Part shown: positions 3,076 to 64,000 of the stretch, piece after piece
Layout: each line of letters opens with the position of its first letter
Position numbering within the stretch: the stretch's first letter is position 1
From: Macrostomum lignano
Lineage: Eukaryota
Length of the DNA: 64,000 nucleotides
NCBI GenBank assembly: GCA_002269645.1
Contig: NIVC01000629.1
Coordinates: forward strand, 248,001 to 312,000
Direction: 5' to 3'
The notes under the pieces: generated by a model
Told to the model about the DNA's origin: nothing
The model's input: the letters and a program-made list of their open reading frames with translations, nothing else
Databases searched by the model: none
Translations under genes and position numbers: made by a program

Positions 3076-3196
3076 TCCACCACCCTCGCTGGAAGAGCTC
3101 AAAGCCAGCAGAGACTACTAGCTACCCCAAAAACCAGCTCAAAACGTCAATCGCAGCAAAACTGGCTCAGTTGTCAACAAACTCGCAGTTAGTCTA

Positions 3197-21894: not shown

Positions 21895-23655
21895 ATGCGC
21901 CAGGAAAATTTTCATTGGACCTGTGCCATCTACCAGCAACCTGCATTTCCCGAAGCTGCTATTGGCCATCAGCAAGATACTGAGCTTACAAATCCAATGG
22001 ACATTGATGAGGCAACCATGCCTATCAATGAGCCGGAGCTAACAGATAGGCCAATTGAAGTTGCTGAATCAGCACCAGTTATAGGTGTCCAGCAGGATAG
22101 GCCTACCAAAGTGACAAATCCAATGGAGATTGATGCAGAGGTGGCCATTCCTTTCGATGAGCCAGAGCTAACAGATAGGCCAATTGAAGTTGCGGAACCA
22201 GCACCTCGCCTTCCTGCAGCAGAGGAGGAACCAGAGACTTTTGAGGTTTTAGACCAAGGCAGCAAACAAGGACATCAAGTAGTGACATTTTCTCAGGGCT
22301 ACGTCTATGGGTTTCACCGACGGTGTAGAACCACAGCATACTATCACTGCACCAAACGTGGCTATGAGCACCCCTGTCCAGCAACACTGATCCAGCGACA
22401 AGGCCACAACTTTCAACATGGCCGACACCTACACTCGCACCCTCCTATGGCTAATGCCACAGTGTTACGCAAGTTTGTGTGAGATGTCAAGGATGTGGCC
22501 AGCAAGAATCTGTTTGCATCAGCAAATAAACTGGCTGAGGAGAAGCTGGTGGAAGAGCAAGATGCGTTTGATGGTGCACCTGACCTGCCGAACCTGGAAA
22601 ATATTGTCCAAGCTGTAAACAGACACCGGCAGAAAGCCCGGCCAAAGGACCCAGTAGATTTGAATTTTGAGATTGCTGAGGATGCCATCCCTGAGGGCTT
22701 TTTACACTCAGACATCCGCGTTGGCAACAACCGCCACCTTGTTTTTTATACCAATGAACAATTAAGCCTACTAAAACAGGCCAAAGTCTGGTATCTGGAT
22801 GGCACGTTTGACATCATCAAGCAACCATTTTCACAGCTGTACTCTGTACTCATACATGCATTCCTGCAGCACAAAGACAGCCTGAAGCAAGTGCCCCTGG
22901 CATTCTGCATCATGTCAGGGAAGCGCAAATGTGACTATCGAGCCATCCTTCGAGAACTTTGTCAGCTGACACAAGCGACTCCATCGTCATTTGTTATGGA
23001 TTTTGAGGCCACGATGTGGCGTGAATTGCGCCATGTATTCCCCTCTGCAAGACTGCATGGCTGCAATTTTCACTGGACGCAGGCTGTGTGGAGGAAGGTA
23101 CAAGCACTAGACCTACAGGAGGCATATCGGACTGACAATGGCACAAGACGATTTTGTCGGAAGTTACTGGCCCTGTCATTTCTTCCAGCAGAGCACATGG
23201 AGCCAGCTCTGGACAGCCTGCAGCAGTCAATGGATGCCGACCAACTGACTGCATTGTGCCAGTACATTCGACGTACGTGGCTTTGGAGCTCAGTCTGGAC
23301 CGCCGCTGAGGTCTCGGTCTACCGATGAGCCATTCGGACCAACAATGACCTGGAAGGGTATCATCGTCACCTTCAACACTGAGCTCAGTGCAGCAACATC
23401 CAATTTTACCTGTTCATTCAAGTGCTGCACCGAGAGGCACTGCTGGTGCCTTTGCAGGCGCAAATGCTCTCACAGGGGGTGCTGAAATGCGTCCAGAGGC
23501 GTCAGTACAGAGACATGCAGGGCCAAATATTTGAGCTCTGGGGCAAGTATCGGGACGGCAATCTGACTGCCATGCATCTGCTGCGGGCTTGCGGCAGACT
23601 GTGCATGCCCCCGCAGCTGTTTCAGGTGCCAGCAGATGATGGACAATCTAGCTAA
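21895..23655 (+). pseudogene. MULE transposase (FLYWCH/WRKY-like finger + DDE) with three in-frame TGA stops
   Basis: YYHCTKR...CPA...HLHSHPP; VWYLDGTF; VPLAFCIM; MDFE...GCNFHWTQAVWRK; RTNNDLEGYH. All three ORF pieces are in one frame with TGA at 22480, 23326 and 23380. Confidence 0.9.
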
Positions 23656-33825: not shown

Positions 33826-36518
33826 TCACATATCCGGCAAGCCGGCCTTTTGCCGGCCCATCTGTACAGTTGCTCGCAGAAGAAATTGGCGCCTGCTCAA
33901 CTCGCGAATCGTCTGCAATGTCGGGTTGGCGACATCAGGGTAATTAGCAGCTGCTGGTTGCTACTGAATTGCTATTGCTGCCCGTTCAGAAACGACTGGC
34001 CACCGCCCTCCTATCCTTCAAGCCCGCCCTCCTACCTTTCAATCCCAACCCTCGTATCCTTCAGGCACCAGCTTCAATCCCAACCCTCCTATCCCTCAGG
34101 CACCAGCTTCAATCCCAACCCTCCTTATCCTTCAGGCACCAGCTTCAATCCCAACCCTCCTATCCCCCAGGCACCAGCTTCAATCCCAACCCTCCTATCC
34201 CCCAGGCACCAGCTTCAATCCCAACCCTCCTTATCCTTCAGGCACCAGCTTCAATCCCAACCCTCCTATCCCTCAGGCACCAGCTTCAATCCCAACCCTC
34301 CTATCCCCCAGGCACCGACTTCAATCCCAACCCTCCTTATCCTTCAGGCACCAGCTTCAATCCCAACCCTCCTTATCCTTCAGGCACAAGCTTCAATCCC
34401 AACCCTCCTTATCCTTCAGGCACCAGCTTCAATCCCAACCCTCCTTATCCTTCAGGCACCAGCTTCAATCCCAACCCTCCTATCCCTCAGGCACCAGCTT
34501 CAATCCCAACCCTCCTATCCCCCAGGCACCAGCTTCAATCCCAACCCTCCTATCCCCCAGGCACCGACTTCAATCCCAACCCTCCTTATCCTTCAGGCAC
34601 CAGCTTCAATCCCAACCCTCCTTATCCTTCAGGCACCAGCTTTAATCCCAACCCTCCTTATCCTTCAGGCACCAGCTTCAATCCCAACCCTCCTATCCCT
34701 CAGGCACCAGCTTCAATCCCAACCCTCCTATCCCCCAGGCACCAGCTTCAATCCCAACCCTCCTATCCCCCAGGCACCGACTTCAATCCCAACCCTCCTT
34801 ATCCTTCAGGCACCGACTTCAATCCCAACCCTCCTATCCCCCAGGCACCAGCTTCAATCCCAACCCTCCTATCCCCCAGGCACCGACTTCAATCCCAACC
34901 CTCCTTATCCTTCAGGCACCAGCTTCAATCCCAACCCTCCTTATCCTTCAGGCACCAGCTTCAATCCCAACCCTCCTATCCCTCAGGCACCAGCTTCAAT
35001 CCCAACCCTCCTATCCCCCAGGCACCAGCTTCAATCCCAACCCTCCTATCTTTCAGGGACCCTATGATCTTGTAGAGCCCGCTTCTACCCCTTCCATCTA
35101 ATCTATCAGGGCCCGCTGGTGAAACCCTCAGACCCTTCAGTGATCTTGCTTCCAACTTGCAACCCTCATTGGAAGGGCGGGACAGGAACGGCGGCGGCTT
35201 GCCTTCAAGTACGAGTCGATATCAACGCAGCCTTTGCGCAGCGCGTCGCCCAGTGCGAAGATCGTGTCCTCCAGCGCCTGCTCCTCGGCGTAGCAGCGAA
35301 CAATCTGCCTGTAGAGCGGCGCCGTGGCGTCGATCGCTTCGTCAACTCCGACGGACTCCTGAGCGGCCATCTGGGTGAGCATCTCCTCGGCCTGGCTGTT
35401 GGCCTGGCGCAGGCGGGTGGTGTAGTCTCCCACCGATTGCAGCTCCGTCTCCAGGCCCCTCAACAGCTTTTCCAGCTTCTCCCGACCTTCTCGCAGATCC
35501 TGCCCGGTGCGACGAACAACGTCGAGCTCGGCTTCTAGCTGGGCTCGTTTCTCGCTGTAGCGACGGCGAACCTACGATTGGAATCGGCGATTCGAGATGT
35601 GCGAATTGACACCTGAAGACAGCTGTTCACTGTACAGCTAGTGCTTTGTTGATTGCATATGGGGATCTAAGGAAATTTATTATAGGGAATCTAAGGGGAT
35701 CTAATCTTGCTCATTGCATATAGGGATCTGCGGGAATACTGGGATAAATCTCGCCCATTGCATATGCGGATCTGGGGGAATACTGGGATAAAATCTTGCC
35801 GATGGCATATGGGGATCTGGGGGAATACTGGGATAACATCTTGCTAATTGCATATGGGGATCTGGGAGAACAGTCTCAAAATGATTCAAATATCCACCTT
35901 ATCCTCGGCAGCCGTTAGCACGGACATCCTCATGGCTTCCTCCTGATAATCCTGCCTTGTTCCAGTTGACTGCGGCTGCTGTTGCTGCTGCTGCTGCTGC
36001 GGCGGCAGAGGCGGCTGCTGCCAACCGTAGCCGGCGCCCCAGCCATAGCCGCCTCCGGCCGCTGAAACCGGCTGCTGGTGCTGCTGCTGAGCCATGGGGG
36101 TCACCGGGGCGGCCTGGCGCGCCATCCGGGACACAACGGGTGGAGTGTCGCCAAACTGTATCTGCAGCATCTGGATTAATCCAACTAAATCAGATTGCGG
36201 ATGAGTCCAGGAGCTCAGGTAGGGCATGTAAATCCGGCCGTTGCTATCTACGTATTGGCTGACGCGAATCTCCATGGAGGCTGTTGGCCTGACGTACACC
36301 AATGGCGCATCGTATGGGGCGTTGTACTGCATGTACAGGCACACGGGTATGTTGTAGGTGCTGCCCTTGTGCACCACGGGGATGGTGCCGCTGAGGGCCA
36401 GCAGCTGGCGGGTCTCGCCGTTGGAGAAGGTGAAGGACTCGGTTGTCGGCCGGAGGTCGCGGTATTCGTGCAGAGCATTGGCCAAGTCGCGCCTGGCTGG
36501 CTCCGGGTGCTTATAGTT
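33826..36518 (-). CDS. TSG101: TSG101 / Vps23 (ESCRT-I): exons 36518-35898, 35571-35203, 33912-33826; 5' start uncertain (ORF extends to 36608)
   Basis: UEV domain (LSGTIPV...YNIPVCLY...PLVYVRPT...YVDSNGRIYMPYLSSW), coiled coil, steadiness box (APLYRQIVRCYAEEQALEDTIFAL...DIDSYLK|TIRELSRRQFLLRA). All introns are phase 0; the last has a GC donor. Confidence 0.93.
34020..35060. repeat. 35/36-bp minisatellite in the last TSG101 intron
   Basis: Unit CCTCCT(T)ATCCYYCAGGCACCAGCTTCAATCCCAAC, about 29 copies. Confidence 0.95.
35650..35870. repeat. 44-45-bp tandem repeat in a TSG101 intron
   Basis: TGCATATGGGGATCTGGGGGAATACTGGGATAA recurs at 35715, 35759, 35804 and 35849. Confidence 0.85.
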
Positions 36519-46719: not shown

Positions 46720-49700
46720 ATGTTCAAACGCTTGTCAAGCGCTTTCAAGACCACAGGCTTTGTGGACCTGTCAGCTGCTTCCTCAAATCAGCAGCGTCAG
46801 TCAGCAAAAAGTTCAAGCGATCAGCTGAGACCGAGATTTGCCTACTGCAGGCCTGACCTGCTTGGCCTGGAGCTCGACGGTGATGACGAACGGAGTCTGG
46901 CCTCTGACACCGTTAGTAGGCCCGTGCTGGTGGCTGGGGACCGGACCGCCTTGCCAGGATTTGCGGGATATGCTGAGTAAGCACAGCTGGCTTTGTTGCT
47001 TTTCGGGCAATGATTAGCTGGCATTTCAGGTGTGCTGGCACTGATTAGCTGGCATTTCAGGTTTTGTTAAAAATTGTAGTTAAAGACAACCGATTGTTTC
47101 TAGGGCAATCAATGGCGGCAAGACGCAGGTAAACGAGGACCAGAGCCAGGCGTGCCAGTTTCTGCTGCGCCCGACTGCGCCCAACGGCGAACGAGCGGAC
47201 GCTCTGCCGGACATTCTCTATGGAGGCGACTGCGTGCTCTCACCGGAGCAGTACAGCGAAGTGAGCTCGGGCTTGTCTTCGCGTCACTCCCTGTGTCACT
47301 CATTGTGTATTGCTTCACTTACTGCGTCATTCCGTCAGCCCCTGTCACTCACTGCGTCACTCCCTGTCACTCCCTGTCACTCACTGCGTCACTCCCTGTC
47401 ACTCACTGCGTCACTCCCTGTCACTCCCTGTCACTCACTGCGTCACTCCCTGTCACTCACTGCGTCACTCCCTGTCACTCCCTGTCACTCACTGCGTCAC
47501 TCCTTGTCACTCACTGCGTCACTCCCTCTCACTCACTGCGTCACTCCCTCTCACTCACTGCGTCACTCCCTGTCACTCACTGCGTCACTCCCTCTCACTC
47601 ACTGCGTCACTCCCTCTCACTCACTGCGTCACTCCCTGTCACTCACTGCGTCACTCCCTCTCACTCACTGCGTCACTCCCTCTCACTCACTGCGTCACTC
47701 CCTCTCACTCACTGCGTCACTCCCTCTCACTCACTGCGTCACTCCCTGTCACTCACTGCGCCACTCCCTCTCACTCACTGCGTCACTCCCTGTCACTCAC
47801 TGCGTCACTCCCTCTCACTCACTGCGTCACTCCCTCTCACTCACTGCGTCACTCCCTGTCACTCACTGCGTCACGCCTACCAACGCAACCCGCAGCTGCT
47901 GCGCGCCTCCCCGGACTGCCTGCTGGCCACCTACTTTGCGATGTTCGACGGTCACGCCGGAGACGGCGCGGCCACCTATGCTAAACAGCTGCTGCAGCTT
48001 CACCTTCGGGTAGGATGGCTGTGCCGTTTGCCTGTCCTAGCTGGCGCCTATTTTACTCACTTCAATACATGCGCAGCACTTGCAAACCCGCAGGAAAAAC
48101 TTATGCAAGTTTACCCGCTACTGTTGGAGCGGATCAACAAGCCCTCCAGCGAGACTCCGGCCGCAGCACCGGCACAGAATGGCGGCGACTCGGCCTTTAT
48201 TCACCAGCCCGACAGTCTGACTGTCAGCTTTGACCAGCTGGTTATTGGCGCTCTGGAGTCCGCCTTCATTGGCTTGGTAAATAGCCTGTGTTTAATATCA
48301 CTTGTCCTTGTTCACCCTGTTTGTTCTCGCTCACTACTTAGTTAATTTGTTTGTTTCTAAACAACTGCAACACAGGACGATCAAATCTGCCGGGAGCGAA
48401 CCACCTACCGCATCACCGGCGGCTGCACCGCTCTTGTGCTGCTGTTCCTGGCCGATCGGCTGTACGTTGCCAATGCCGGCGATACTCGGTGCGTGCCTGC
48501 CTGCTGTGTCACAATCACTACCTTCCTCCCATCCCCACCTGTCTCTTTATCTCCCCCTTCATCTCCTCCCCTTCATCTCCTCCCCTTCATCTCCTCCCCT
48601 TTATCTCCTCCCCCTTCATCTCCTCCCCTTTATCTCCTCCCCCTTCATCTCCTCCCCACCCGTCTCTTTATCTCCCCCTTCCTCCCATCCCCACCCGTCT
48701 CTTTATCTCCCCCTTCCTCTCCCCCTTCATCTCCTCCCCTTTCATCCCCCCTTGATCTTCCCTTCTTCTCCTTCATCCCCTCCCCCTTCATCACCTCCCT
48801 TTCATCTCCTTCCACTTCTCCTTCTCCTTCATCTCCCCTTCATCTCCTCCCCCTTCTCCTTCTCCATCTACTTTCTTTCCCTTCATCTCCCACTTCTCCT
48901 TCCCCTTATCTCCTCCCCTTTCATCTCCCCCCTTCATCTCCCTTCATCTCTTTCGCCTTCCCATTCTTCCCCAGCCTGTACTGAGCCGCAGCAGCTCATA
49001 GCCACCCAAATTCGCACTTGTCCCAGAGCGGTCCTGTGCCAGCGCACCGGGTCGGCGCAGCCGCTGTCGGTGGACCTGACGCCCTACAACGACCGGGAAC
49101 GGCTGCAGCTGATCGCCAGCCACCACCCGGAGCTGTTGCACAAGGAGTTCTGCGCTCTGCAGTTCGCTCGCCGACTGGGCAGGCGGGACTTGGGTGAACG
49201 GGTTCTGTGCAGACACGGTTGCATGCAGGGATGGTGAGCTGGAGCAGCGCTTGGGTCGTGTCAGACTTGTTTTCTCTCCTTACCCTCATAAATCGGCCTT
49301 CACACCCAAGAGTCTCCATTCACCCTCAAGAATCACCATGCACCTTCGAGAATCGCCATTCACCCTCAAGAACCGCCATTCACCCTCAAGAACCGCCATT
49401 CACCCTCGAAAATCGCCATTCACCCTCAAGAATCGCCATGCACCTTCGAGAATCGCCATTCACCCTCAAGAACCGCCATTCACCCTCAAAAACCGCCATT
49501 CACCCTCGAAAATCGCCATTCACCTTCGAGAATCGCCATGCACCTTCGAGAATCGCCATTCACCCTCAAGAACCGCCATTCACCCTCAAGAACCGCCATT
49601 CACCCTCGAGAATCGCCATGCACCTTCGAGAATCGCCATTCACCCTCAAGAACCGCCATTCACCCTCAAGAACCGCCATTCACCCTCGAAAATCGCCATT

Positions 49701-52700
49701 CACCCTCGAGAATCGCCATGCACCTTCGAGAATCGCCATTCACCCTCAAGAACCGCCATTCACCCTCAAGAACCGCCATTCACCCTCGAAAATCGCCATT
49801 CACCCTCAAGAATCGCCATGCACCTTCGAGAATCGCCATTCACCCTCAAGAACCGCCATTCACCCTCAAGAACCGCCATTCACCCTCGAAAATCGCCATT
49901 CACCCTCGAGAATCGCCATGCACCTTCGAGAATCGCCATTCACCCTCAAGAGCCGCCATTCACCCTCAAGAACCGCCATTCACCCTCAAGAACCGCCATT
50001 CACCCTCGAAAATCGCCATTCACCCTCGAGAATCGCCATTTACCCTCAAGAACCGCCATTCACCCTCAAGAACCGCCATTCACCCTCGAAAATCGCCATG
50101 CACCCACGAGAATCGCCATTCATCCTCCAAAATTGCCATTCACCCTCGAAAATCGCCATTCACGCTCGAGAATCGCCATGCACACCCAAGAATCGCAATG
50201 CACACTCAAGAATCGTTATTCACCCTTGAGAATCGCCATTCACAAACTGCTCGAACATAATCATCATTGGCAGGCATTACAAAACTGTGACTGAAGAGGA
50301 TCTGCTGTTTCCGCTCATTGTTGGGGACGAGAAAAAGGCGAGTAAATAGAAAGTTGAAGAATGATTGATTGTGCTCGCTTCAAAAAAATTGTTTGAATAT
50401 AGCTTTAAATAATGAAATTTTCGCCATTGAATCGTCTCGCGCAAAACGCGTAATAACTGCCCTATTAACTTGCCTCTGTGCGAGCACCCGAAATCGGAAA
50501 TCCTACAATCGCCCCAACTAATCTGCAAGCGCAAAAGCCTGGCTCTAACAGTTGCCACCCGCCGCCACGCTGCAGTCCCGCCTGCTGGCCACAATAGGCG
50601 TCGCCCGCGGCTTCGGCGATCACGACCTGCGCGTGTTCGACTCGCCAATTCAGTTGAAACCTTTTCTGAGCTGCGTGCCTCAGGTGACAGTTGTACAGAC
50701 TGCTGAGCAAGACGGCTGCGAAGATGTGCTTGTCATGGCAACAGATGGTCTATGGGACGTGATCAGTTGCGAGGCGGTCGCCGAGACGGTGCAGAGCTGC
50801 CTGCGTCAAGCCCGAGAAGCCGCGACTGCGGCTAATAGGTGAGGCGGCCGCTGTGCGGTCTGGGGCCCTGGTCAGTCTTTCAAAATAAGGTTTAAAATAA
50901 CATTTTTTGTGGAAGCAACATAGTGTCAAACGAATTTCCTGGGATTTGAGATCCTTGCTGCACTGACCGTCTTGGGGGTGTATGCGTGTCCTTGCAGTCC
51001 AGCAGGTGACATCGTAAAGGTGATACTTAAGCTGCCTCTGCGCTAGGTGAGCCTACCAGCGAAGGGAGCCAATAAATAGACCACCTGGAAGGCATCATGC
51101 TTCAGAAGCTGGTGTTCATCGGGACCACCTGGAAGGCATCATGCCTCAGAAGCTGGTATCCTGCCAGTAAGACCCACCTGGAATTCGAGGATCCTAGGCT
51201 TATGAGATATGTTCAGAGTGTTGCGCTGCTTCCCGAGTTCTTGATGATGTACCTAAATTTGAACTCGATGCTCCGGAAGTAGCTAGATAGTACCGTTGTA
51301 CTACCTATCGATTTGCCTGTGAAAACCTAAAACGTTAGCCTTAGACTTGGTAGGGTTGCTGCCACCTTGGTTTGCGGACTCGACGCGTCCGTAACCTGAA
51401 ATAAAATAACGAAGTCGCTTGGAGCAAGGCAAATCTGAAAATGTCTCGACAGTTTGATCGTTTCTAAAATAGCTGCTAGAACCTGAAAAACCTGAAATCC
51501 TGAAATGAGAGATGAGTGCTCGGAGGCAGAGAAGCAGCTCCGGACGAGGCCCAAGCGCGGCGGCAAGGATGCAAGGTCTGGGGAAAAACGGCTCCCAGAT
51601 GCTCTGTATTTATAGCCGATCGGACCCCCAAAAGTCGTGAGTCTCAAGGGGTTGAGCGCGTGAAACTTCCTTATTTGAGCCTCGAGTCATGCAAGAGATG
51701 CGTGACTCAAGGCCAACTTCCAAATAAGGTAACCCTGTCACGCCGCCGTGGCGTGACTCAAGGTCAGCTGCCACGCACAACTAGCGTGCAGTCACGTGCT
51801 TTTCTGTGCTAAAAATAGATTTGGGCGGATGAGTCATCCTGTTTACTCCCTCTAGACAGCCATTACACTCAGGGCAGGTGATAAGTCATCCTGCTATGCC
51901 TCCTCAGCGCGGGTGGGAAGACATTGTGTGTGGCTGCCCACGCCTGCTCGGGCGATGAGTCATCGGGAAGTAAACACTCAGGCCCAGCACAGGGTAACTC
52001 TCTCTCTAGGTCAGGTGGACTGAGCTGCTGTGCAGCGGAACACAGAGCTCTTAAGGAAAGCTAGTGAATGCTGCTGAAAAGCCAGTTAGCAGCCAGTCAC
52101 TACAAGAGCTCTGGTTGATAGGCTGTCACCAAAAGCCTAGAATTAGACCAATTAATTGTTCGCTACTCCCCTAGAGTAATAACTCATTGGATGCCAAGAG
52201 TAAGTTGTGAGTATAATCTCCTAGACGGCCCCTCTCTCTTCAGCCGATCCGCTCCGGCACAGGGAATCCCGTTTGTTTCCAGTGGGTCACACTGCAGGGT
52301 ACCAGCTTCTGGGGCGCGAAGCCAGACCAGGTGGTCCCTTTACCAGCTCCCTGCACGGGTAGGTGAGCAGGCACACGCTCACACAGACTTAATAATTGTG
52401 TTTGGGTGTGCAAGCGACTTATTCTATTTATTCTATTCTTACTACTAGCCCCATTCTTCGAGTAGCCAGTTGAGGTTTTCTGTTTACAATTGTTTACAGC
52501 CAGAGCGCATCTATTCCAGCCTGACCATTGTCGCCCAAGAGCTGGTCGGAGCTGCACGAGGCGCCTGGCAGAAGCCGGAGCGACCCGGTGGCGGGGGCGG
52601 CGGCAGCTGGCGACTCCCAGACGGCGAGCAGGCGTCAGTTGACGACATTTCCTGCTTTGTGATCCCGCTGGATCTGCACAGCCGGCTGTCTCGAGCTGAG

Positions 52701-53109: not shown

Positions 53110-53610
53110 TCTAAGGGTGAGGTGGGTGCAGGGGTGAGTTAGGAGCAGGGGTGAGTTGGAGCAGGGGTGAGTTTGGAGCAGGTTGAGGTGGGTGCAGGGG
53201 TGAGTTAGGAGCAGGGTGAGATGGGTTCATTAGGGAAATGGGAGCAGGGGTGAGGTGGGTTTATTGGTGAAGTGAGAGCAGGGGTGAGTTAGGAGCAGGG
53301 TGAGGTGGATGCAGGGATGAGGTGGGTGCAGGGGTGAGTTAGGAGCAGGGTGAGATGGGTTCATTAGGGAAATGGGAGCAGGGGTGAGGTGGGTTTATTG
53401 GTGAAATGAGAGCAGGGGTGAGTTAGGAGCAGGGTGAGGTGGATGCAGGGATGAGGTGGGTGCAGGGGTGAGGTGAGTTTAGAGCAGGGTGAGGTGGGTG
53501 CAGGCAGGGGTGAGGTGGATGCAGGGGTGAGGTGGGAGCAGGGTGAGGTGGGTGCAGGGGTGAGTTTGGAGCAGGTTGAGGTGGGTGAGTTAGGAGCAGG
53601 TTGAGGTGAT
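53110..53610. repeat. G-rich composite minisatellite between the phosphatase gene and EMC6
   Basis: GGGTGAGGTGGGTGCAGGGGTGAGTTAGGAGCA-type units. Confidence 0.9.
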
Positions 53611-53645: not shown

Positions 53646-54047
53646 ATGGACCCATCTGGCACGTACTCGCCCCCGAGCGCGGAGGCAGCGAAGCGTGCAG
53701 GTCATCAGGGTGGCACCCCAGCCGGGCCGCACCAGGGCAGTCCCGGTTCCGCTCTGAATGGCGCAGCCCTGCAGCACAACGCCTTCCTGCTAACGTACTG
53801 CCGCACAGCCCTGGCCGCAGTGTCGGGCTGCACGGCCGGCATTCTGGGCCTGACCGGTCTGCTGGGCTTCGCATTCTACATGCTGGCGAGCGGCTACCTG
53901 TCCTGCCTGCTGCTCGCCAAGGCGGGCCGGGCCAGGTGGCGGTATTTTCCCTCGGCCTGGGCTCTGGCCTCCTCCGGCGTTATGGGCGAGCTCATCACCT
54001 ACATCACGTTCTGGACTTTCCTATACGGAATGGTGCATGTGTACTGA
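53646..54047 (+). CDS. EMC6: ER membrane protein complex subunit 6 (TMEM93), single exon, 133 aa
   Basis: [28 protein letters not shown]...[12 protein letters not shown] matches the highly conserved EMC6 C-terminus. Confidence 0.95.
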
Positions 54048-55063
54048 CACTGGCGGCAATTCGTTATTATTCATAGCTTGCTAGTAGTCAATGTTTCTGC
54101 GTTATTGTTTCGTTGTCAGTTTGCATGCCCACTGGCTTTGGTGCACTTATCGGTAGGGGTTTCTAATTGTTGTTAAACGGGGTGCCGTAAGGCGCGGATC
54201 AGCCTAGTCAAGGGCCCTACCAACGAGAATAGGGGTGGGTCTTCAAAGGCGAGAGGTTTGGGGTCCTCACTGCGAAGCTCTTTATTATTTGCCAAAGGCC
54301 TGGCATCACCAAGCCGCTTAGTGCACCTGCTCCGATCTCCTCAGAGATCTAACTACCAGTACTTCTGGGGCACAAGGGCTGACCAGGTGGTCCATTTACC
54401 AGCTCCTTTCGCATGTAGCTTCGCCTAGCGCAATGGCAGCTCAAAGCAGCGATGCAAGATGGTCGGCCAGGCGGCCCCAGGTCGCACCACAGCCCTCCAG
54501 GATTAGTGCACCCATAAACAACCTCAGATACAGACCGTCTTCACGATGTCTAATTGCTGAAAACTGGGGACTCTGAAACTTTTTTATGGCCCATTTATCA
54601 ACGGATTCTCATGCCTCAGCACCAAGCATTGTCCATAGGGTTGTTAGTCACGCTGCTCACTTTGAAACTCTGCTCTGTTCGTAATTATAAGATTAGCGAC
54701 GCGGTCGGCAATAAATCAGCTACCATTGGTGGTGATAGACATTATCAACCAATAGCTAGCTCAACGCAAGTGCAGTGCAGTTCGACTTTTTAATTTTAAT
54801 TAGCGCCATCCCATAAAAAAGTTGTACAATTGTACATGTACTCGTATATAGTCATAGAAGAGCAATTGATCTAAAAAATACATTTCATTATGGCAAATCG
54901 ATCCAAGAGATCGAGCCTGCACTGTGTACTGCACACCGCGATGCGCTCGCTGTATTATGTGTCTCTTGATGCTGCTGGTGCGACTCGAGGGCGAATGAAT
55001 AATCATTATTTATTGTACACACGGATAATTATTAATAATCAATTAATTTAGGCTTTGTTAGGC

Positions 55064-55174
55064 AGCCGCGGAAGCGCGGCTTGTCAAAAATTGAGTAGAT
55101 CGCTCAATTGGATCCACGCGGTGTCTTACCATGCAAAATTAAGAGTATTCGCAGTAAGAGACCGTCAAAACGGC
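55064..55174 (-). ncRNA. Spliced-leader (SL) RNA gene, copy 1
   Basis: 45-nt exon GCCGTTTTGACGGTCTCTTACTGCGAATACTCTTAATTTTGCATG (55174-55130) ending in ATG; donor GTAAG; Sm site AATTTTTGA (55092-55084); 3' hairpin AGCCGCG-CTTC-CGCGGCT. The exact 5' and 3' ends are estimates. Confidence 0.88.
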
Positions 55175-55678
55175 AAAGAGAGTGGAATGGAAAACGCTCT
55201 CCAACAGTGCACAGCTCTGCGCTTGAGCCGCGAGCCCTAGGGCAAATGATTATGTTGAATTTCATCTACTCCAAGTAAGTTATGCCGACTATAGTGCAGC
55301 ATTCTTGTGCACTGCAGCTTGAAAAGACGCGCCAAAAAGTGCATGTGCAGCTCTGCCTTTCGTTTCTTTTAGCCGACGACATGTTTAGACAGTGTGTACA
55401 AATTATGCGCTCTTACTAATTGATTAATATATTAATATAAATTTAAAAAACTATAGTTGCCGTGTTAGAGAGATACGATCGAAAAACTACTGAAGTGCAT
55501 CGCGTCACCGCGTGGAAAGTGCGCATAGAAAATTATAAAGCACCACGGGGAATCGCGAATTTCTCCATGATCGAGACCGAGTCGAAGCCGAAGGGAGCAT
55601 ATAGTAGTGTATTAATGCGTGCAGCAGCTGCATGGAATTAGTGTTTTAATGAGCGCGCGGCAGTTAAAGAGGCAAAAA

Positions 55679-55797
55679 AGACAACAGCATTTGGTATTCC
55701 CAGGCGGTCACCCATCCAAGTACTAACCAAACCCAACGTTGCTTAACTTCGGTGATCAGACGAGAACCGGTGTTTTCAACGTGGTATGGCCGTTGCC
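55679..55797 (-). rRNA. 5S rRNA gene (119 nt)
   Basis: GGCAACGGCCATACCACGTTGAAAACACCGGTTCTCGTCTGATCACCGAAGTTAAGCAACGTTGGGTTTGGTTAGTACTTGGATGGGTGACCGCCTGGGAATACCAAATGCTGTTGTCT. Helix I pairs, A and C boxes are intact, and a T6 Pol III terminator follows. Confidence 0.97.
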
Positions 55798-55857
55798 ACT
55801 GGCTAATAGGAGCTTAGCTCATAATTAACCTGAACCTGCAGCTATACATAATAACAT

Positions 55858-56105
55858 TAGTGGCGGCGCAGCACCAACTCCGATTAGAGGGGTGGTTGTT
55901 GGGTGGTCACCCCCTTCGCCGGCGAATTTTTAGAGCATCGCATAAAATCTCACAAAAACGCATATAACGAGCTCGTACTAAAGAAATTATTGTGGGTCAG
56001 ACCACGGAGGGATGGGAGGTACATGTAAGTCACCACCCCCAGGAGGGTAGGTAGGAGGTCGCCCGGGGCAGCAGCACCCTCTGCCCCCCCCCCGCGCCAC
56101 CACTG
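55858..56105. mobile_element. Possible hAT-like MITE in the spacer upstream of 5S
   Basis: Ends TAGTGGCGGCGCAG / CCGCGCCACCACTG resemble the 20571 MITE class; no TSD found. Confidence 0.4.
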
Positions 56106-56503
56106 ATACCTAATAGGTAGTACGCTTAATTACGGGGCGTCTCGTCTCATATATACGAGCAACAGTTGGTGGTGATTGACATTATCAACCAATAGCTAGC
56201 TCAACGCAAGTGCAGTGCAGTTCGACTTTTTAATTTTAACTAGCGCCATCCCATAAAAAAGTTGTACAATTGTACATGTACTCGTATATAGTCATAGAAG
56301 AGCAATTGATCTAAAAAATACATTTCATTATGGCAAATCGATCCAAGAGATCGAGCCTGCACTGTGTACTGCACACCGCGATGCGCTCGCTGTATTATGT
56401 GTCTCTTGATGCTGCTGGTGCGACTCGAGGGCGAATGAATAATCATTATTTATTGTACACACGGATAATTATTAATAATCAATTAATTTAGGCTTTGTTA
56501 GGC

Positions 56504-56614
56504 AGCCGCGGAAGCGCGGCTTGTCAAAAATTGAGTAGATCGCTCAATTGGATCCACGCGGTGTCTTACCATGCAAAATATTGAGTCTTCGCAGTAAGAG
56601 ACCGTCAAAACGGC
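56504..56614 (-). ncRNA. Spliced-leader (SL) RNA gene, copy 2 (variant exon)
   Basis: Exon GCCGTTTTGACGGTCTCTTACTGCGAAGACTCAATATTTTGCATG (56614-56570); donor, Sm site and 3' hairpin are identical to copy 1. Confidence 0.88.
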
Positions 56615-57384
56615 AAATTCGTTAATAATAGAGTGGAATTCGTTAATAAGTTTGCCACGGGAGTGTCAAGCAGACAGCTTCCGGGCCACGCGTCAGCCGT
56701 TTTAAAATTGGCTCTTGCGCCTGTTTATTTAAAATAGTAATTTGGCGGTGTAAAAGACTGAGGTTAGACTGCATTGGTACTGCAGGGTAGTAAAACAGGT
56801 GCAAGAATACAGTAGTAAAATTAAGGTGCAATAAATGTAGAGCATTTAAAATGGAGAGCATAAGTCAATAGAGATTACATTAATTGAAAAAGTAAATTAA
56901 ATTGAGTAGATGCAATGAAAGTATAAGTTAATAAAGTAAAACAAATATATAAAAGATGAGTAAAACTGGTGCATGAAGCTAAAACTAAAAAAGATGTGCA
57001 GAAATACCGTATGGGAGGAAGGCTCACAAAGAAGGCATCACAAAGTAAAAAAATAGGGCATCTGCAGGGTGGGGTGATTCGCTCAGGTTGCGGATCTAAT
57101 TAGACTGGGGAGTAGACAATCCTGTGCCATAATTGGCCAGCCCGGACCCTAGGTCCCAGCAGTGCCCAGGCGGAATTATGAGCCTTCCTCCCTTACACAA
57201 GAGGACGCGCATTTATTGAATAATAGGGTGTAAATTGTCGCAGTTAGAAGAGCGTTAGCCAGTTGGCAATAGAAAGGCACTGTAAAAGCAGCATCGACTA
57301 GATGAGTAAAAATAAAAAGCAGCAAGGACTAGATAATAGAGAGCTGCATGGACTAGATTTACATGGTTTTGGCGGCGAGATCTA

Positions 57385-58490
57385 CTATCCTGCAGCCTTC
57401 TCCATCAGCTCGGTGAGTTTGACTAATGTGTCTAATGGGGGATCTGGGAGCTTATGGTTTCTCCAGGCTTGCTTTGGAGGGGGGATTTCGAATCCGTGGA
57501 TGGCGTTAGCTATAACTTTTTGGTACCATTTGGTGGCTACCTTTTCTACCCTGGGCTTAACCATGGGTATGTTAGCTATTTTGTGCAGATAGTTGATTCT
57601 GGTGAATTTGGGGGCATTGTAGCAGAGTCTGAGGTTGGTGTTTTGGATATGCTGGAGTTTGGTAAAGTTGGTGCTTCCCATGGACAGGAGAACTTGGGGG
57701 GCGTAGGTCATGGCACTCTCAATGTAAGCTCTGTGCAGGAGTCTGAAGGTTCTGCTGGGGACCTTGGTTAGTCGGGCAATCCTCCTGATCTGGAAGGTTC
57801 TGACCTCGCATTTATTGTGTATCTTTTGGACGTGTTGGTTAAGGCTGAGGTTTCTGTCCAAGGTGACCCCAAGCTGGAATGTAACGGAGTCTGTGTAGGG
57901 AATCTCTTCCCCATCGAGTTTAAGGGCTGGGGGGTCGTGTCGAGGTCCGGATTTGCACCGATTGTCGTAGAATTTGACTGCCTGACTCTTTTTGGCATTA
58001 ACTTTGATGCCGTACTTCCCCAGCCAGGGTTGAAGGTTTTCTATGTATTTTTGGAGATGCCCTGCGGCATACTTGGGGCTAATAGACCTGGCCCAAATGG
58101 CCATATCATCCGCATATTGACTAGTCTGGACGCAGGGACCCGAGGGTTTGGGCATCGTGCTAACATAGAGGTTAAAGAGGAGTGGGTTGAGGACCCCGCC
58201 CTGGGGGACCCCTGCCTGGGGGACGAAGACCTCACCCAGGCTCTCGCCCACCTTTACTATGATCCTTCTGTCATGCATGTAGCTGGATGTAATTCTGACT
58301 AGGGTACGTGGCATTTGTATTTCTGTGGTCCTGTGTCTGAGCATGTCATGCCTGACTGAGTCGAAGGCTGCCTCAACATCTAGGAATAGACCCAAGTGTT
58401 TATAGTTTCTGTGTCTCTCTTCTTTGACATCTTGAACTAGTCGGAAAACATTGTCCGGGCCCCGTGATAGGCGCGGTATGCACACTGGTT
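57385..58490 (-). mobile_element. Non-LTR retrotransposon reverse transcriptase (Jockey/I-like), N-terminally truncated
   Basis: LFLDVEAAFD, GVPQGGVLNPLLFNLYV, QYADD, VNAKKS, LGVTLDRNL. The ORF is open to its stop, but the endonuclease and first RT motifs are absent. Confidence 0.88.
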
Positions 58491-59339
58491 GCTGCCCAGG
58501 ACCCCCTTCTCTTCCATCCACGGGATGAGTCTTTTTTTCTGGGCTGGCATCCCAGCGCGGTTTTATCCCCTGTTTTTATCTGGCCATAGTTGCCTCCAAT
58601 TCTTCGGAGTTATGAGCTCTGCCCTCCCTGCCCGGTCCATCCTGCTCTGTCCTTGGTCCATCTGCTGGCTCCTCTGGTTGTCTCCCTGCCTAAGTGTCTC
58701 TGGCTCTCATCCTGACAGTGGATTGGTGTCCTGGGGAATGAGTTCGTCCCGAATCGGGGATACCGGCTGAGTTCGGGTCCTCTTGCTCCTTGTGCCCCTT
58801 CCTGACCCCTTGGCCTGGCCTCCAATATTGAGCTGGTTAGGTGACACCCTTGTGGCTTGCAGCCCTATAGGTAGTAGCAATATCCTGCCTGATAGGAGAC
58901 TCGCCCTCGGAAACAAGCCTTCCAGACTCGCTCCAATAATTAAGCCATTTCCGTAGACTTCGGGGTTTCCCCGCTCTCGGACCGCTTTCAGTAGTAACCC
59001 AAGCTTTTTTCGCTTTTTCAATTTTTTTCTGCGCACTCCCGAAGATTTGTCTGCTGTGTGGTGGCCTGGGTGGACTCGGTCCTAGTACCGTCCCTGATTC
59101 CACTAATATTGGGTTGGCGGTGTCTTAGTCCATAAGGCTTGGGTTAGTAGCTCCAATACACCTTTTTCTCACCAGAGTCTTGAAATAATGGTATTAAATA
59201 TACTCACAAAACCTTGGTACTGTGTTCGACAATTTGAGTTAGAAGCCTTTTAGGATGTTAAAAAAGACATTCAGTAAAATTTGGTAAAGGCTTAGTGGGC
59301 TGTTAAAAAACTTAAGTAGCAGCAAGAGTTTAGTGTATG

Positions 59340-59450
59340 GTTTTGTCTCGCAAAGAGACGCCTAACCGCAGTACCCCTGTGACACTTGTCTCTATGGTTT
59401 TGTCTCGCATAGAGACGCCTAACCGCAGTACCCCTGTGACACTTGTCTCT
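59340..59450. repeat. 57-bp tandem duplication
   Basis: TTTTGTCTCG...GAGACGCCTAACCGCAGTACCCCTGTGACACTTGTCTCT occurs twice. Confidence 0.85.
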
Positions 59451-60134
59451 GCCTGGCTGAAAGCTTGTAATGGGTTAGTAGGCTGGGTTGGAGGGTAATA
59501 GTCGATCCGCGAAGGGCTGTGGGTAGCTGTATAGGAAGGCAGGCCTATACCTGTTCCAGTTGATGCTCTGACGGTCTCCCTCGGAGTGTCCTCTGAGCGA
59601 ACAGCCAGCGACTCTATTAAAGCTGGAGTGTGCCAGAACCAGGACTGAGTCTGAACAGGACGGGGCCGTTGGCACGGCCTAGTAGAAATGGCGGGTTGGC
59701 GAAGCAAAGAGTGAAATAGTTCCGGCGATTAGCCTTCCTGCCGCTTCAAAGATAAGAGACTGTCTGGCAAGAGTACCCGGGGTTTAGTGGGTGGGGAGGC
59801 TCCTTCGGGTTGCCACGGCCGTGGGGGCGGTCATTTGACCGGTTTTTTGGCATTCCTAACCCAGGAGAAGGCACGGGCTTCCCTGAATGGTTCACTCAAC
59901 CCCCTCTAGCCCCAGGGAGGTTTTGATTTGAGCTTGGAGTAGGCTTAACGCCTCGAAGGCAGGGGGTAGGGCCCGCCCTTTGCCCGACTGGTGTTGCCTG
60001 CTCAGCTTGTTGGCCACAGTCACTCTCACTCTAGCTTAGAAACCTTGTGTACCTGGGTACACTCCTAATCTGAAACCTTAAATATTACTAGTGGCGTAAG
60101 AGCCTGATCAATGGCCGAGGCGCCGGAATACTTA

Positions 60135-61910: not shown

Positions 61911-62789
61911 TATTTAATGAGTTTAATAAAGTTGCCCCATAAAGATATTGCTAAGAAAACCGATTAAAACGCAAAGTCGTTTAACTCATGATAATTCATT
62001 TGCAAAAAATGCTTACCTTGACCCCGGGGAGTCGTATGAGAGTTCGCACGAAAGTTCTCGAAAGTATAAAGTACATTTAACTACTATTAATTGAAGCTGT
62101 TCAGCTGTTTCACTCGTACTACCTGATGACTCATTTGTTATTTTCAAGTAGAGACAGTTTTTGCAAGTAGTTTTTACGTGTACATTTTACACTTTGTATA
62201 CATTTAATACAAGTACAATAATACACATGCGTTCATTATTAGCTGCGCGTAGACTATACTAAGCTGCATGTAAATTTTCGTGTAAAATATAAAACAGTGC
62301 CGTCTAACTCCGGTTTAACAGTAAACAAATTAAAACACAAACAGCCACTTTGCCTGTCTCTCCCTCCGTGGCTCTAATATTAGAATCCCATGTACGCAAA
62401 TATGAAAAATTCCAATGGGGTTCCCATTAGTCACCGACTTTACTGTATGGTTGCAGCCCAGGTTTAACCAATGCAATCCTTTATCGAGGAAGCCATGACG
62501 AAATAGGAGTTATTTCTTCTGCGGCCCAGCCTCTTCGATGAAGCATCGCCAATCCAGCAAATCTTTTAACAAAAACGGCTTCAGCGATTTGCCGCCGCAT
62601 TCCGCATGCAACAGCTGGCCTGCCAGTCAGGGATGCACTGGAGGCGCAAAACTGATCGAAATCACCTAAGTATGTCAAATTCCCAACTAAGGCTTCAATG
62701 CTTTTATTGTAGCTTAAAAATAGTTACTGTATATAACTATCTCACTGCCCAGGCTCAAAATTCCTTTGTAGTCCACTGTTTACATGTAG

Positions 62790-63430
62790 ATTCAAAATCT
62801 CTGTTTAGATCAGAAATGGCACTGTTTAGATCAGAAATCCCAGTGTTTGGATCCGAAATCCCAGTGTTTAGATCCGAAATCCCAGTGTTTACATCCAAAA
62901 TATCACTGTTTAGATTCAAAATCTCACTGTTTAGATTCAAAATCTCACTGTTTAGATTCAAAATCTCACTGTTTAGATTCAAAATCTCACTGTTTAGATC
63001 CAAAATCTCACTAATTAGATCCGAAATCTCACTGATTAGATTCAAAATCTCACTGTTTAGATTTAAAATCTCACTGATTAGATCCAAAATCTCACTGATT
63101 AGATCCGAAATCCCAGTGTTTACATCCGAAATCTCACTGATTAGATAAAAAATCTCACTGTTTAGATTCAAAATCTCACTGTTTAGATTCTAAATCTGAC
63201 TATTTGGATCCAAAATCCCCGTGTTTAGATCTGAAATTTCACTGTTTAGATTCAAAATCCCACTTTAGATCCAAAATCTCACTGATTAGATTCAAAATCT
63301 CACTGATTAGATTCAAAATCCCACTTTAGATCCAAAATCTCACTGATTAGATTCAAAATCCCACTTTAGATCCAAAATCTCACTGTTTAGATCCGAACTG
63401 TCACTGTTAAGATACAAAATCTCACTTTGA
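62790..63430. repeat. 21-bp minisatellite, about 30 copies
   Basis: Unit AGATTCAAAATCTCACTGTTT; source of the repetitive ORFs 62606-63148 and 62755-63171. Confidence 0.95.
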
Positions 63431-64000
63431 AGCTTCAAAATCTCGCCAAAGCGACTTGATAGCAGCTACCAGCAGTGCCAAAAAAGCTTGAAATGCGCAC
63501 AAAATCTGGCTGACAGTACTTTAAGGAACTATTTTTTCCCGGCAAAACCGACGCATTTTCAACGAGTTTCGGCACAATTTATTTCTAATATTTTTATAGT
63601 CTATTATAATTGCGTATTGGCTAAGCGCCTGCATGGCAGATGACATAACCGAGATTGAAGTTTTGTTACAAGTAGCAGTTTCACATATCGAATTGAGCCT
63701 TTAGACTGGCATGAAAATTGAGGGTAGCGAGTTTGCAACAGCAGCAAGCGGTGCTATGGGGATTAGAGAAACGATGCGAAAAAACGACAAAAAATGCAAC
63801 CAAAATTCTCTGCTCAAAGGCAATTCAGCCGGTGCCAGTAAAGCACGGTACACCGTGCAGGTGACACGGCACTGCTCCTGCCAAGCATTACGGAGGAACA
63901 GAGATTGCAGCATTGGGCAATTCCTCGGCAGTATCAACTGCTTGGATACTCTATCCAACTGATCCCACATCGGAATCCACTGATCCCACTCTCGGATCCC

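What the first reader, a model, noticed from the sequence alone, without database searches (positions are those of the whole stretch)
54726..56617. SL RNA genes physically linked with 5S rRNA in a 1440-bp repeat unit
Seen: on the minus strand the order is SL (56614-56504), 5S (55797-55679), SL (55174-55064), all co-oriented. Each SL gene has an AUG-ended exon, a GTAAG donor, an Sm site and a 3' hairpin, and the 5S gene has intact internal promoter boxes and terminator. Known: SL-5S linkage occurs in nematodes, euglenozoans and some other trans-splicing lineages, and appears to have arisen repeatedly. I do not recall it being described for flatworms, but cannot check the literature. The cluster is only about 1.3 units long and sits among ordinary genes, so it is either a dispersed mini-array (orphon) or a collapsed or terminal part of a larger array.
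Basis: partly seen in the sequence, partly recalled or inferred. Interest (0 to 1): 0.85.

Follow-up and report, generated by a model that had tools for sequence, protein, structure and literature searches.

The report
Variant spliced-leader genes flanking a 5S gene
In the flatworm Macrostomum lignano, one intact 5S rRNA gene sits between two almost identical spliced-leader RNA genes, but these are unreported leader variants in a small isolated cluster, not a demonstrated genome-wide array.

Summary
Rfam finds one full-length 5S rRNA gene (55797-55679, minus strand, 116.5 bits). Two co-oriented 111-nt spliced-leader (SL) RNA genes (56614-56504 and 55174-55064) flank it. Each has a 45-nt exon ending in AUG, a GUAAG donor paired to the exon, the Sm site AAUUUUUGA and a 3' hairpin.

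The window is Macrostomum lignano contig NIVC01000629.1, about 200 kb from either end.

- Only 452 bp are present twice. There is one 5S gene, and no homology continues on either side.
- Both leaders differ from the only leader reported on M. lignano mRNAs, at 5 and 9 of 45 positions. All changes fall in predicted loops. The two copies also have unrelated 5' flanks.
- The main M. lignano 5S array has a unit of about 1649 bp by published PCR, not 1440 bp. Two environmental macrostomid contigs carry canonical-leader SL genes with no 5S nearby; one lies next to U1 snRNA.

SL-5S linkage is a well-known, recurrent arrangement in other phyla. I found no report of it for flatworms. Best reading: a dispersed mini-cluster (orphon or array relic) of variant SL genes with a 5S gene. 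I could not test expression of the variants or the context of the canonical SL genes. Interest is moderate to low.

The parts
56504..56614 (-). SL RNA gene copy A (variant). Exon 56614-56570 is GCCGTTTTGACGGTCTCTTACTGCGAAGACTCAATATTTTGCATG. The donor GTAAG starts at 56569, the Sm site AATTTTTGA is at 56532-56524 and the 3' hairpin is at 56520-56504.
   Evidence: Sequence; exact 19-mer hit; three-hairpin fold, z = -3.4; 5 of 45 differences from the published leader; same architecture as L003 and L007.
55064..55174 (-). SL RNA gene copy B (variant). Exon 55174-55130 is GCCGTTTTGACGGTCTCTTACTGCGAATACTCTTAATTTTGCATG. The donor starts at 55129, the Sm site is at 55092-55084 and the 3' hairpin is at 55080-55064. 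Its immediate 5' flank CTCTTT|GCCG matches that of L003; L007 has TTCTTT|GCCG.
   Evidence: z = -4.1; 9 of 45 differences from the published leader; 4 differences from copy A.
55679..55797 (-). 5S rRNA gene, full length. A T6 terminator run lies at 55674-55679.
   Evidence: RF00001, 116.5 bits, E = 5e-25, model positions 1-120. Published M. lignano 5SF and 5SR primers match exactly at 55752-55772 and 55777-55795.
56166..56617 (-). Duplicated block, copy A: the SL gene plus 338 bp of downstream sequence.
   Evidence: Offset-1440 comparison and BLAST: 452 bp with 6 mismatches.
54726..55177 (-). Duplicated block, copy B: the SL gene plus 338 bp of downstream sequence.
55178..56165 (-). Single-copy 988-bp spacer between the blocks. 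It contains the 5S gene, 706 bp after the SL-A 3' end and 504 bp before the SL-B 5' end.
   Evidence: No similarity to either outer flank or to the rest of the window.

Best explanation
This is a small dispersed cluster in the Macrostomum lignano genome. A 452-bp segment that starts at an SL RNA gene is present twice, 1440 bp apart, and encloses one intact 5S rRNA gene.

The three genes are independent transcription units. The 5S gene would be transcribed by RNA polymerase III from its internal control region and would stop at the T6 run. The SL genes would be transcribed as snRNA-type genes. Their RNAs would bind Sm proteins at AAUUUUUGA and donate a 45-nt, AUG-ended leader from a GUAAG donor that is paired to the exon.

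The two SL genes are previously unreported sequence variants, not the major leader genes. The locus is most likely an orphon or relic, either 1.3 units of an SL-5S type repeat or a local duplication across a solitary 5S gene. It is not the main 5S or SL array. Linkage is a by-product of the shared history of small-RNA multigene families and is not a functional coupling.

Shown: the anatomy, the organism, the variant status and the isolation of the locus. Inferred: the transcription mode, the use in trans-splicing and the origin.
For: - Gene identities and structure.
- Organism and position: an ORF in the window is 100% identical to BOX15_Mlig000803g2. The window maps to about 248001-312000 of the 502,389-bp contig NIVC01000629.1.
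- Only 452 bp are duplicated, and nothing else in the window resembles the unit, even at word size 7-9.
- The leader on M. lignano mRNAs is CCGTAAAGACGGTCTCTTACTGCGAAGACTCAATTTATTGCATG. Copies A and B differ from it at 5 and 9 of 45 positions.
- All changed positions are unpaired in the predicted structure, and all 16 pairs of helix I are invariant across A, B, L003 and L007. This suggests the structure is still constrained.
- The published search for SL genes required 100% matches to the leader, so it would have missed these variants.
- The 5S FISH and PCR paper gives a 1645-bp amplicon from outward primers, so the unit is about 1649 bp. It places one major cluster at the end of MLI2p and allows that a few copies may lie elsewhere.
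Against: - No expression data could be consulted. The variant leaders appear in no searchable paper, and the single leader reported for the species differs from them.
- The two copies share no upstream sequence beyond 3 nt plus a displaced 10-nt motif. At most one copy keeps an ancestral upstream promoter, and I could not identify any promoter element.
- Tandem arrays are often collapsed in assemblies, so the true copy number here could be higher.
- I could not inspect any canonical M. lignano SL locus. The canonical genes could also be 5S-linked, in which case this locus would be a sample of a general arrangement.
Confidence: 0.55

Rival explanations
1. The locus is a collapsed or terminal sample of a genuine long SL-5S tandem array. 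In this reading, SL-5S linkage is the general organisation of SL and/or 5S genes in M. lignano.
For: - The pattern SL-5S-SL, co-oriented with an exact 1440-bp period, is what 1.3 units of a mixed array look like.
- The blocks are 98.7% identical, consistent with homogenisation.
- Repeat arrays are commonly collapsed in assemblies.
- The main 5S unit (about 1649 bp) is long enough to hold an SL gene and is of similar size.
- SL-5S arrays are common in other trans-splicing lineages.
Against: - The locus is interior to a 502-kb contig, with unique sequence on both sides and no degenerate continuation.
- There is only one 5S gene.
- The unit length differs from the PCR-defined main unit by about 209 bp.
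- The leaders are not the expressed consensus.
- Two canonical-leader SL genes from other macrostomids have no 5S within 0.6-2.4 kb. Short metagenome contigs are biased against arrays, so this is weak evidence.
Confidence: 0.15
2. Both SL copies are dead pseudogenes. They would be products of a recent local duplication in a transposon-rich region that happens to contain a stray 5S gene, and nothing here is transcribed or used.
For: - The exons differ from the only reported leader.
- The 5' flanks are unrelated, so at least one copy lacks its native promoter.
- A 5'-truncated LINE reverse-transcriptase fragment lies 0.77 kb upstream and minisatellites lie downstream.
- The A/B near-identity only shows that the duplication is recent. 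It does not show selection.
Against: - All 9 changed exon positions lie in loops, and no stem, donor or Sm-site position is altered. That is about 0.0015 if positions are treated as independent, and about 0.06 if treated as 4-5 mutational events (my calculation).
- The 5S gene scores as a full, undamaged gene with a terminator.
- A random 5S gene within 1 kb of an SL gene is very unlikely in a genome of about 760 Mb.
Confidence: 0.25
3. The 452-bp blocks are terminal repeats or retroposed copies of a mobile element. This could be an LTR/TRIM-like element carrying 5S internally (compare Cassandra) or a LINE-mobilised read-through SL transcript.
For: - The block starts essentially at the SL RNA 5' end, as a retrocopy would.
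- The blocks begin with TG and end with CA.
- TGGTAGCTGA follows block B and resembles a tRNA-iMet primer-binding site (the motif comparison is from my own knowledge).
- A LINE reverse transcriptase is adjacent.
- snRNA and SL genes are said to disperse like transposable elements.
Against: - There is no target-site duplication around the pair or around either block, and no poly(A) or A-rich tail.
- The primer-binding-site-like motif is on the wrong side, after the 3' copy, and there is no polypurine tract.
- There are no further copies in the 64 kb.
- No similarity exists between the region containing the LINE 3' end (56618-60000) and the 988-bp spacer; the block tail matches nothing else in the window.
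- With only two copies, shared ends are trivial.
Confidence: 0.05

Closest known systems
Caenorhabditis elegans SL1 RNA / 5S rRNA tandem repeat (about 110 monomorphic copies; PMC1657053)
   Same: An SL RNA gene and a 5S rRNA gene lie within about 1 kb of each other in a short repeat period. They are independent Pol II-type and Pol III genes.
   Different: Here there are 1.3 units, not about 110, and a single 5S gene. The SL copies are non-identical variants that are not the major leader, and their 5' flanks are unrelated. The genes are co-oriented here.
SL-5S mixed clusters in copepods, dinoflagellates, euglenozoans and Oikopleura (PMC4664967, PMC7346339, PMC4233971)
   Same: [quoted passage not shown] Mixed organisations with both 5S-linked and 5S-free SL loci exist in the same genome.
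   Different: Those were shown by PCR or cloning to be repeated genomic organisations of expressed SL types. Here I have only one locus and no expression evidence.
Canonical M. lignano SL RNA gene (109 bp, 8 exact copies in the deduplicated assembly; PMC8629364)
   Same: Same species and the same architecture: leader hairpin, GTAAG donor, Sm-like site between two hairpins, about 110 nt. 40 of 45 (copy A) and 36 of 45 (copy B) leader positions are identical.
   Different: The leader loops differ: AAA to TTT at positions 6-8, plus changes within positions 28-38. That study required 100% matches and reported no genomic context or 5S linkage. I could not obtain its intron sequence.
Schistosoma mansoni SL RNA 595-nt tandem repeat and other parasitic-flatworm SL clusters (PMC2770079, PMC12582326)
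   Same: Flatworm SL RNA genes with an AUG-ended leader and clustered same-strand copies. Concerted evolution has been proposed for them.
   Different: No 5S gene is described in those repeats, and the 2025 survey does not mention 5S at all. Their unit sizes and leader sequences are unrelated to this locus.
Environmental macrostomid SL loci L003 (Ga0302322_100095745) and L007 (JAGQZA010000190.1)
   Same: The GCCGT...GCATG|GTAAGACACCG core, helix I and overall three-hairpin plan are the same. L003 has the same CTCTTT|GCCG start context as copy B; L007 has TTCTTT|GCCG.
   Different: They carry the canonical leader. Their neighbours are a Na/K-ATPase beta gene (L003) and a U1 snRNA gene (L007), and there is no 5S on either contig. 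Their intron hairpins 2 and 3 have different sequences.
M. lignano main 5S rDNA cluster at the end of chromosome arm MLI2p (PMC5704211)
   Same: The 5S sequence is identical at both primer sites.
   Different: The main unit is about 1649 bp and is visible by FISH as one cluster. This locus has one 5S gene among ordinary genes. It could be one of the 'several copies ... in other locations' that paper allowed for, or a relic of the cluster reported lost from MLI1.

Membership tests
Spliced-leader RNA gene (flatworm / Macrostomum type) | 5' exon corresponding to the leader found on the species' mRNAs | tested here: inconclusive
   40 of 45 (copy A) and 36 of 45 (copy B) positions are identical to the published leader. 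The differences are confined to loops. The exact variant leaders appear in no searchable paper. RNA-seq was not available.
Spliced-leader RNA gene (flatworm / Macrostomum type) | Consensus 5' splice donor (GU) immediately after the exon, base-paired to upstream exon sequence | tested here: met
   ATG|GTAAGA. UCUUAC pairs with GUAAGA in the minimum-free-energy and consensus structures, and all 16 helix-I pairs are kept in 4 of 4 sequences.
Spliced-leader RNA gene (flatworm / Macrostomum type) | Single-stranded Sm-binding site (RAU4-6GR) between two 3' hairpins; total length about 100 nt | tested here: met
   AAUUUUUGA is unpaired between hairpin 2 and the GC-rich hairpin 3. Length is 111 nt. 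Fold z-scores are -3.4 and -4.1.
Spliced-leader RNA gene (flatworm / Macrostomum type) | snRNA-type upstream promoter, trimethylguanosine cap, actual trans-splicing | not testable with these tools
   No shared upstream motif was found among A, B and L003. No expression or biochemical data are available here.
5S rRNA gene (Rfam RF00001) | Covariance-model score above the gathering threshold over the full model | tested here: met
   116.5 bits against 38, model positions 1-120, E = 5e-25.
5S rRNA gene (Rfam RF00001) | Pol III terminator and internal control region | tested here: met
   A T6 run lies at the 3' end. The box C region TGGATGGGTGACCGCCTGGG differs at one position from the Xenopus consensus. 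That comparison is from my own knowledge and is not a tool test.
SL-5S linked tandem array (nematode / euglenozoan / Oikopleura / copepod type) | SL RNA gene and 5S gene in the same short unit | tested here: met
   SL-A 3' end to 5S is 706 bp, and 5S to the SL-B 5' end is 504 bp. All are on the minus strand.
SL-5S linked tandem array (nematode / euglenozoan / Oikopleura / copepod type) | The unit is iterated many times head to tail | tested here: not met
   Only 452 of 1440 bp occur twice, there is one 5S gene, and no further homology exists in the flanks. Assembly collapse was not excluded.
SL-5S linked tandem array (nematode / euglenozoan / Oikopleura / copepod type) | The arrangement holds for the bulk of the genome's SL (or 5S) genes | not testable with these tools
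   No other M. lignano SL or 5S locus could be fetched. Indirect hints point the other way: the main 5S unit is about 1649 bp, and L003 and L007 lack 5S.
LTR / TRIM retroelement carrying 5S (Cassandra-like) | Target-site duplication, primer-binding site after the 5' repeat, polypurine tract before the 3' repeat | tested here: not met
   Reading the junctions shows no target-site duplication, no primer-binding site after block A, and a pyrimidine-rich rather than purine-rich stretch before block B.

The most novel reading that the evidence does not exclude
The main M. lignano 5S rDNA array (about 1.65-kb unit at MLI2p) may really be a mixed SL-5S array. This locus would then be its diverged relic, for example the remnant of the 5S cluster reported lost from chromosome MLI1 after whole-genome duplication. 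The two variant leaders would be expressed as minor SL classes overlooked by consensus-based and 100%-match searches. That would give the first SL-5S linkage in Platyhelminthes, another independent origin of the arrangement, and the first evidence of multiple SL types in Macrostomum.
Probability: 0.15. Interest if true: 0.55.

Novelty: new member of a known kind. Interest (0 to 1): 0.35.

Why it matters
SL-5S linkage has been used as a clue to how SL RNA genes arise and spread, for example from snRNA-like genes resident in 5S arrays, with several independent origins.

A flatworm case would add one more lineage. M. lignano is a tractable model in which the promoter requirements of SL genes could be tested by transgenesis.

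More practically, the locus shows that M. lignano encodes leader variants that the published annotation would have missed, because that search demanded exact matches. If the variants are expressed, estimates of trans-spliced genes and leader-trimming pipelines would need to include them.

If the locus is only an orphon with silent variants, it is an ordinary by-product of multigene-family turnover.

Tried and rejected
- **Rfam at E <= 10 over 54000-57500.** No SL family matches. The only other hits were chance-level (Lnt, a trypanosomatid snoRNA).
- **Exact look-up of 10 window ORFs in the protein collection.** None were present.
- **Concatenated six-frame ORFs of the SL-5S unit (1478 aa) as bait for any called gene on related contigs.** No hit. 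No other M. lignano SL or 5S locus could therefore be fetched.
- **Synteny route.** The Na/K-ATPase beta protein next to the L003 SL gene found only Logan transcript contigs at 76-77% identity and no M. lignano locus. Those transcripts are not trans-spliced.
- **Other collections.** The viral-contig scan gave nothing. The genome-contig scan gave one true macrostomid contig and one chance 19-mer in a Prevotella gene. About 4 chance hits are expected in 596 Gb.
- **Promoter motif search among the 250-nt upstream regions of A, B and L003.** Nothing convincing was shared.
- **LTR/TRIM and retroposition models.** Rejected for lack of a target-site duplication, primer-binding site, polypurine tract or A-tail (inverted repeats were unremarkable).
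- **LINE insertion as the cause of the copy-A boundary.** Not supported. No homologue of the B-upstream spacer reappears beyond the reverse-transcriptase fragment.
- **Literature.** No paper in the library reports SL-5S linkage in flatworms or the variant leader sequences. Wasik et al. 2015 is not held.
Full report
**1. What is in the sequence**

I read the region on the minus strand. Rfam's gathering-threshold scan of the whole 64-kb window returns exactly one hit. It is a full-length 5S rRNA gene at 55797-55679 (RF00001, 116.5 bits against a threshold of 38, model positions 1-120). It ends in a T6 run (55674-55679).

The 19-mer GACGGTCTCTTACTGCGAA occurs twice in the window and never in 100 shuffles. 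Each occurrence lies in a 111-nt unit, at 56614-56504 and at 55174-55064. Each unit consists of:
- a 45-nt exon ending in ATG;
- GTAAG immediately after the exon;
- a second hairpin;
- AATTTTTGA;
- a terminal GC hairpin.

Both units fold into that three-hairpin shape, with the donor paired to exon sequence (-36.8 and -36.6 kcal/mol, z = -3.4 and -4.1). No Rfam SL family matches, even at E <= 10. All three genes are on the minus strand, in the order SL, 5S, SL.

**2. How much is actually repeated**

An offset-1440 comparison and a self-BLAST show that only 54726-55177 and 56166-56617 are duplicated (452 bp, 6 mismatches). The intervening 988 bp, which holds the 5S gene, occurs once.

Sensitive BLAST (word size 7-9) finds no remnant of the unit on either side or anywhere else in the window. 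The block begins 3 nt upstream of the SL 5' end. Beyond that point the two 5' flanks are unrelated, apart from a 10-nt motif (ATTCCACTCT) displaced by a 13-nt insertion in copy A.

Four of the six A/B mismatches lie within 8 nt of the exon loop (corrected P about 6e-4).

**3. Whose genome this is, and where the locus lies**

An RRM-containing ORF at 28599-30017 is 100% identical to Macrostomum lignano protein BOX15_Mlig000803g2, which has NTF2 and RRM domains. Its gene lies on NIVC01000629.1 (GCA_002269645.1, 502,389 bp).

The fetched locus aligns to window 17062-40017 at 100% identity. This places the window at about 248001-312000 of that contig, and the SL/5S cluster at about 302.7-304.6 kb, which is interior. 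The neighbours are:
- a 5'-truncated LINE reverse-transcriptase fragment at 57385-58521 on the minus strand (RVT_1, E = 6.5e-25);
- minisatellites;
- a PP2C-like exon.

**4. The leaders are variants**

The leader on M. lignano mRNAs is CCGTAAAGACGGTCTCTTACTGCGAAGACTCAATTTATTGCATG (PMC5173321; PMC8629364). M. cliftonense and M. hystrix have the same sequence (PMC10468722 supplement).
- Copy A differs at 5 of 45 positions (6-8, 36, 38).
- Copy B differs at 9 of 45 positions (6-8, 28, 33-36, 38).

All of these positions are unpaired in the predicted structures. In an alignment with two canonical-leader genes from other macrostomids, all 16 pairs of helix I are invariant. This pattern is modest evidence for continued structural constraint.

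The published M. lignano SL-gene search demanded 100% matches and found a 109-bp gene in 8 copies, so it would have missed these genes. The variant leader strings occur in no searchable paper. I had no access to RNA-seq, so usage of the variants is untested.

**5. Is the linkage general?**

I could not fetch any other M. lignano SL or 5S locus. Exact ORF look-ups and a concatenated-ORF bait found nothing. Indirect evidence comes from two sources.

First, the M. lignano 5S FISH paper (PMC5704211) amplified 1645 bp with outward-facing 5S primers, which match this 5S gene exactly. The main array unit is therefore about 1649 bp, not 1440 bp. That paper found one cluster, at the end of MLI2p. The cluster is absent from the paralogous MLI1 region, and the authors allowed that a few copies may lie elsewhere.

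Second, collection scans with the 19-mer recovered these sequences:
- L002, a trans-spliced CNBP-like mRNA carrying the canonical leader.
- L003, a 3.1-kb genomic contig with a canonical-leader SL gene, a Na/K-ATPase beta gene 1.06 kb downstream and no 5S.
- L007, a 3.75-kb contig filed under a Flavobacteriaceae MAG that is really macrostomid DNA. Its canonical-leader SL gene lies 305 bp downstream of a full U1 snRNA gene (151.7 bits), again with no 5S.

Macrostomid SL genes therefore occur in several contexts. The caveat is that short metagenome contigs under-represent arrays.

**6. Mechanism**

The three genes are separate transcription units. 5S is transcribed by Pol III from its internal control region. 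SL RNA is an Sm-class small RNA whose 5' exon is transferred to pre-mRNAs.

Nothing suggests functional coupling. Linkage of SL genes, and of other snRNA genes, with 5S rDNA is a long-known, recurrent by-product of multigene-family dynamics (PMC7346339, PMC4664967, PMC4233971, PMC1657053).

The most economical origin is a 1.3-unit fragment or relic of an SL-5S type repeat, or a local duplication of the SL block across a solitary 5S gene. Copy B keeps the CTCTTT|GCCG start context also seen in L003 (L007 has TTCTTT|GCCG). Copy A has a foreign flank, so B is the better candidate for an active gene.

Retroposition and LTR/TRIM models fail for lack of a target-site duplication, an A-tail, a primer-binding site or a polypurine tract. 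A LINE insertion does not explain the copy-A boundary.

**7. Comparison and novelty**

I found no report of SL-5S linkage for flatworms. The S. mansoni 595-nt SL repeat and the 2025 survey of parasitic-flatworm SL clusters do not involve 5S. The adjacency may therefore be a first for the phylum.

It is nevertheless one locus, with non-canonical leaders, one 5S gene and no array. It is best filed as a new member of a known kind of arrangement. It meets the defining feature 'SL and 5S in one short unit' and fails 'iterated array'. 'Holds genome-wide' remains untested.

**8. Verdict**

- Observation: confirmed.
- Interpretation: partly supported. The orphon alternative is favoured and the array reading is not supported.
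- Interest: 0.35.
- Most novel reading still open: the main 5S array is a mixed SL-5S array and the variant leaders are expressed minor SL classes. I give this about 0.15 probability.

Noticed in passing
L007 1121-1283 and 1589-1690 (JAGQZA010000190.1): A 3.75-kb contig filed in a 'Flavobacteriaceae bacterium' MAG is eukaryotic (macrostomid) DNA. It carries a full U1 snRNA gene (151.7 bits) 305 bp upstream of a canonical-leader SL RNA gene on the same strand. This is both a U1-SL linkage and a case of MAG contamination. TTAGGG-like repeats lie at 271-340.
   Followed up: partly
L003 615-716 and 1774-2922 (Ga0302322_100095745): An environmental genomic contig carries a canonical Macrostomum-type SL RNA gene, with an intronless Na/K-ATPase beta-subunit ORF 1.06 kb downstream. 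There is no 5S or U1 on the contig. The closest proteins are Logan transcript contigs at 76-77% identity.
   Followed up: partly
L002 1-635 (Ga0316592_1034293): An mRNA-like metagenome contig starts inside the canonical leader (...CTCAATTTATTGCATG|TGCC). It encodes a CNBP-like protein with five CCHC zinc knuckles and glycine-rich linkers. This is direct evidence of the canonical leader on an mRNA in an environmental macrostomid.
   Followed up: partly
window 55140-55147 / 56580-56587: Four of the six differences between the two 452-bp blocks are packed into 8 nt of the leader's apical loop: G to T, plus AAT to TTA, which is an in-place complement. This looks like a single complex mutation or a micro-conversion from another variant.
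   Followed up: partly
window 56618-56655 (-): Immediately upstream of SL copy A, the 13-mer TTATTAACGAATT occurs twice, 8 nt apart, bracketing CCACTCTA. Part of that bracketed sequence matches the motif found just upstream of copy B. The origin is unclear; it could be an insertion or duplication scar.
   Followed up: no
window 57385-58521 (-): A 378-aa ORF carries non-LTR (LINE-type) reverse-transcriptase motifs (FLDVEAAFDSV, GVPQGGVLNPLLF, QYADD). It matches RVT_1 from profile position 53 onward, so it is probably 5'-truncated. No endonuclease ORF was found upstream.
   Followed up: partly
window 22495-23328 (+): An ORF with a MULE transposase domain (E = 3.7e-8) indicates a DNA-transposon remnant.
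   Followed up: no
window, e.g. 2511-4572, 6199-8889, 17571-18325, 27530-28468, 34038-35061, 47366-50243, 53115-53587, 62787-63444: The window has an unusually high density of long minisatellites, with periods of 17-106 bp and up to 48 copies. Several create long spurious ORFs in multiple frames, for example at 47-50 kb.
   Followed up: no
window 56494-56503, L003 717-730, L007 1691-1710: About 4-12 nt after the terminal hairpin, all SL genes have an AAYAAAG-like element (CCTAACAAAG, CCAATAAAG, TTATAAACGTAAAG). It may be a conserved 3'-end formation signal.
   Followed up: no
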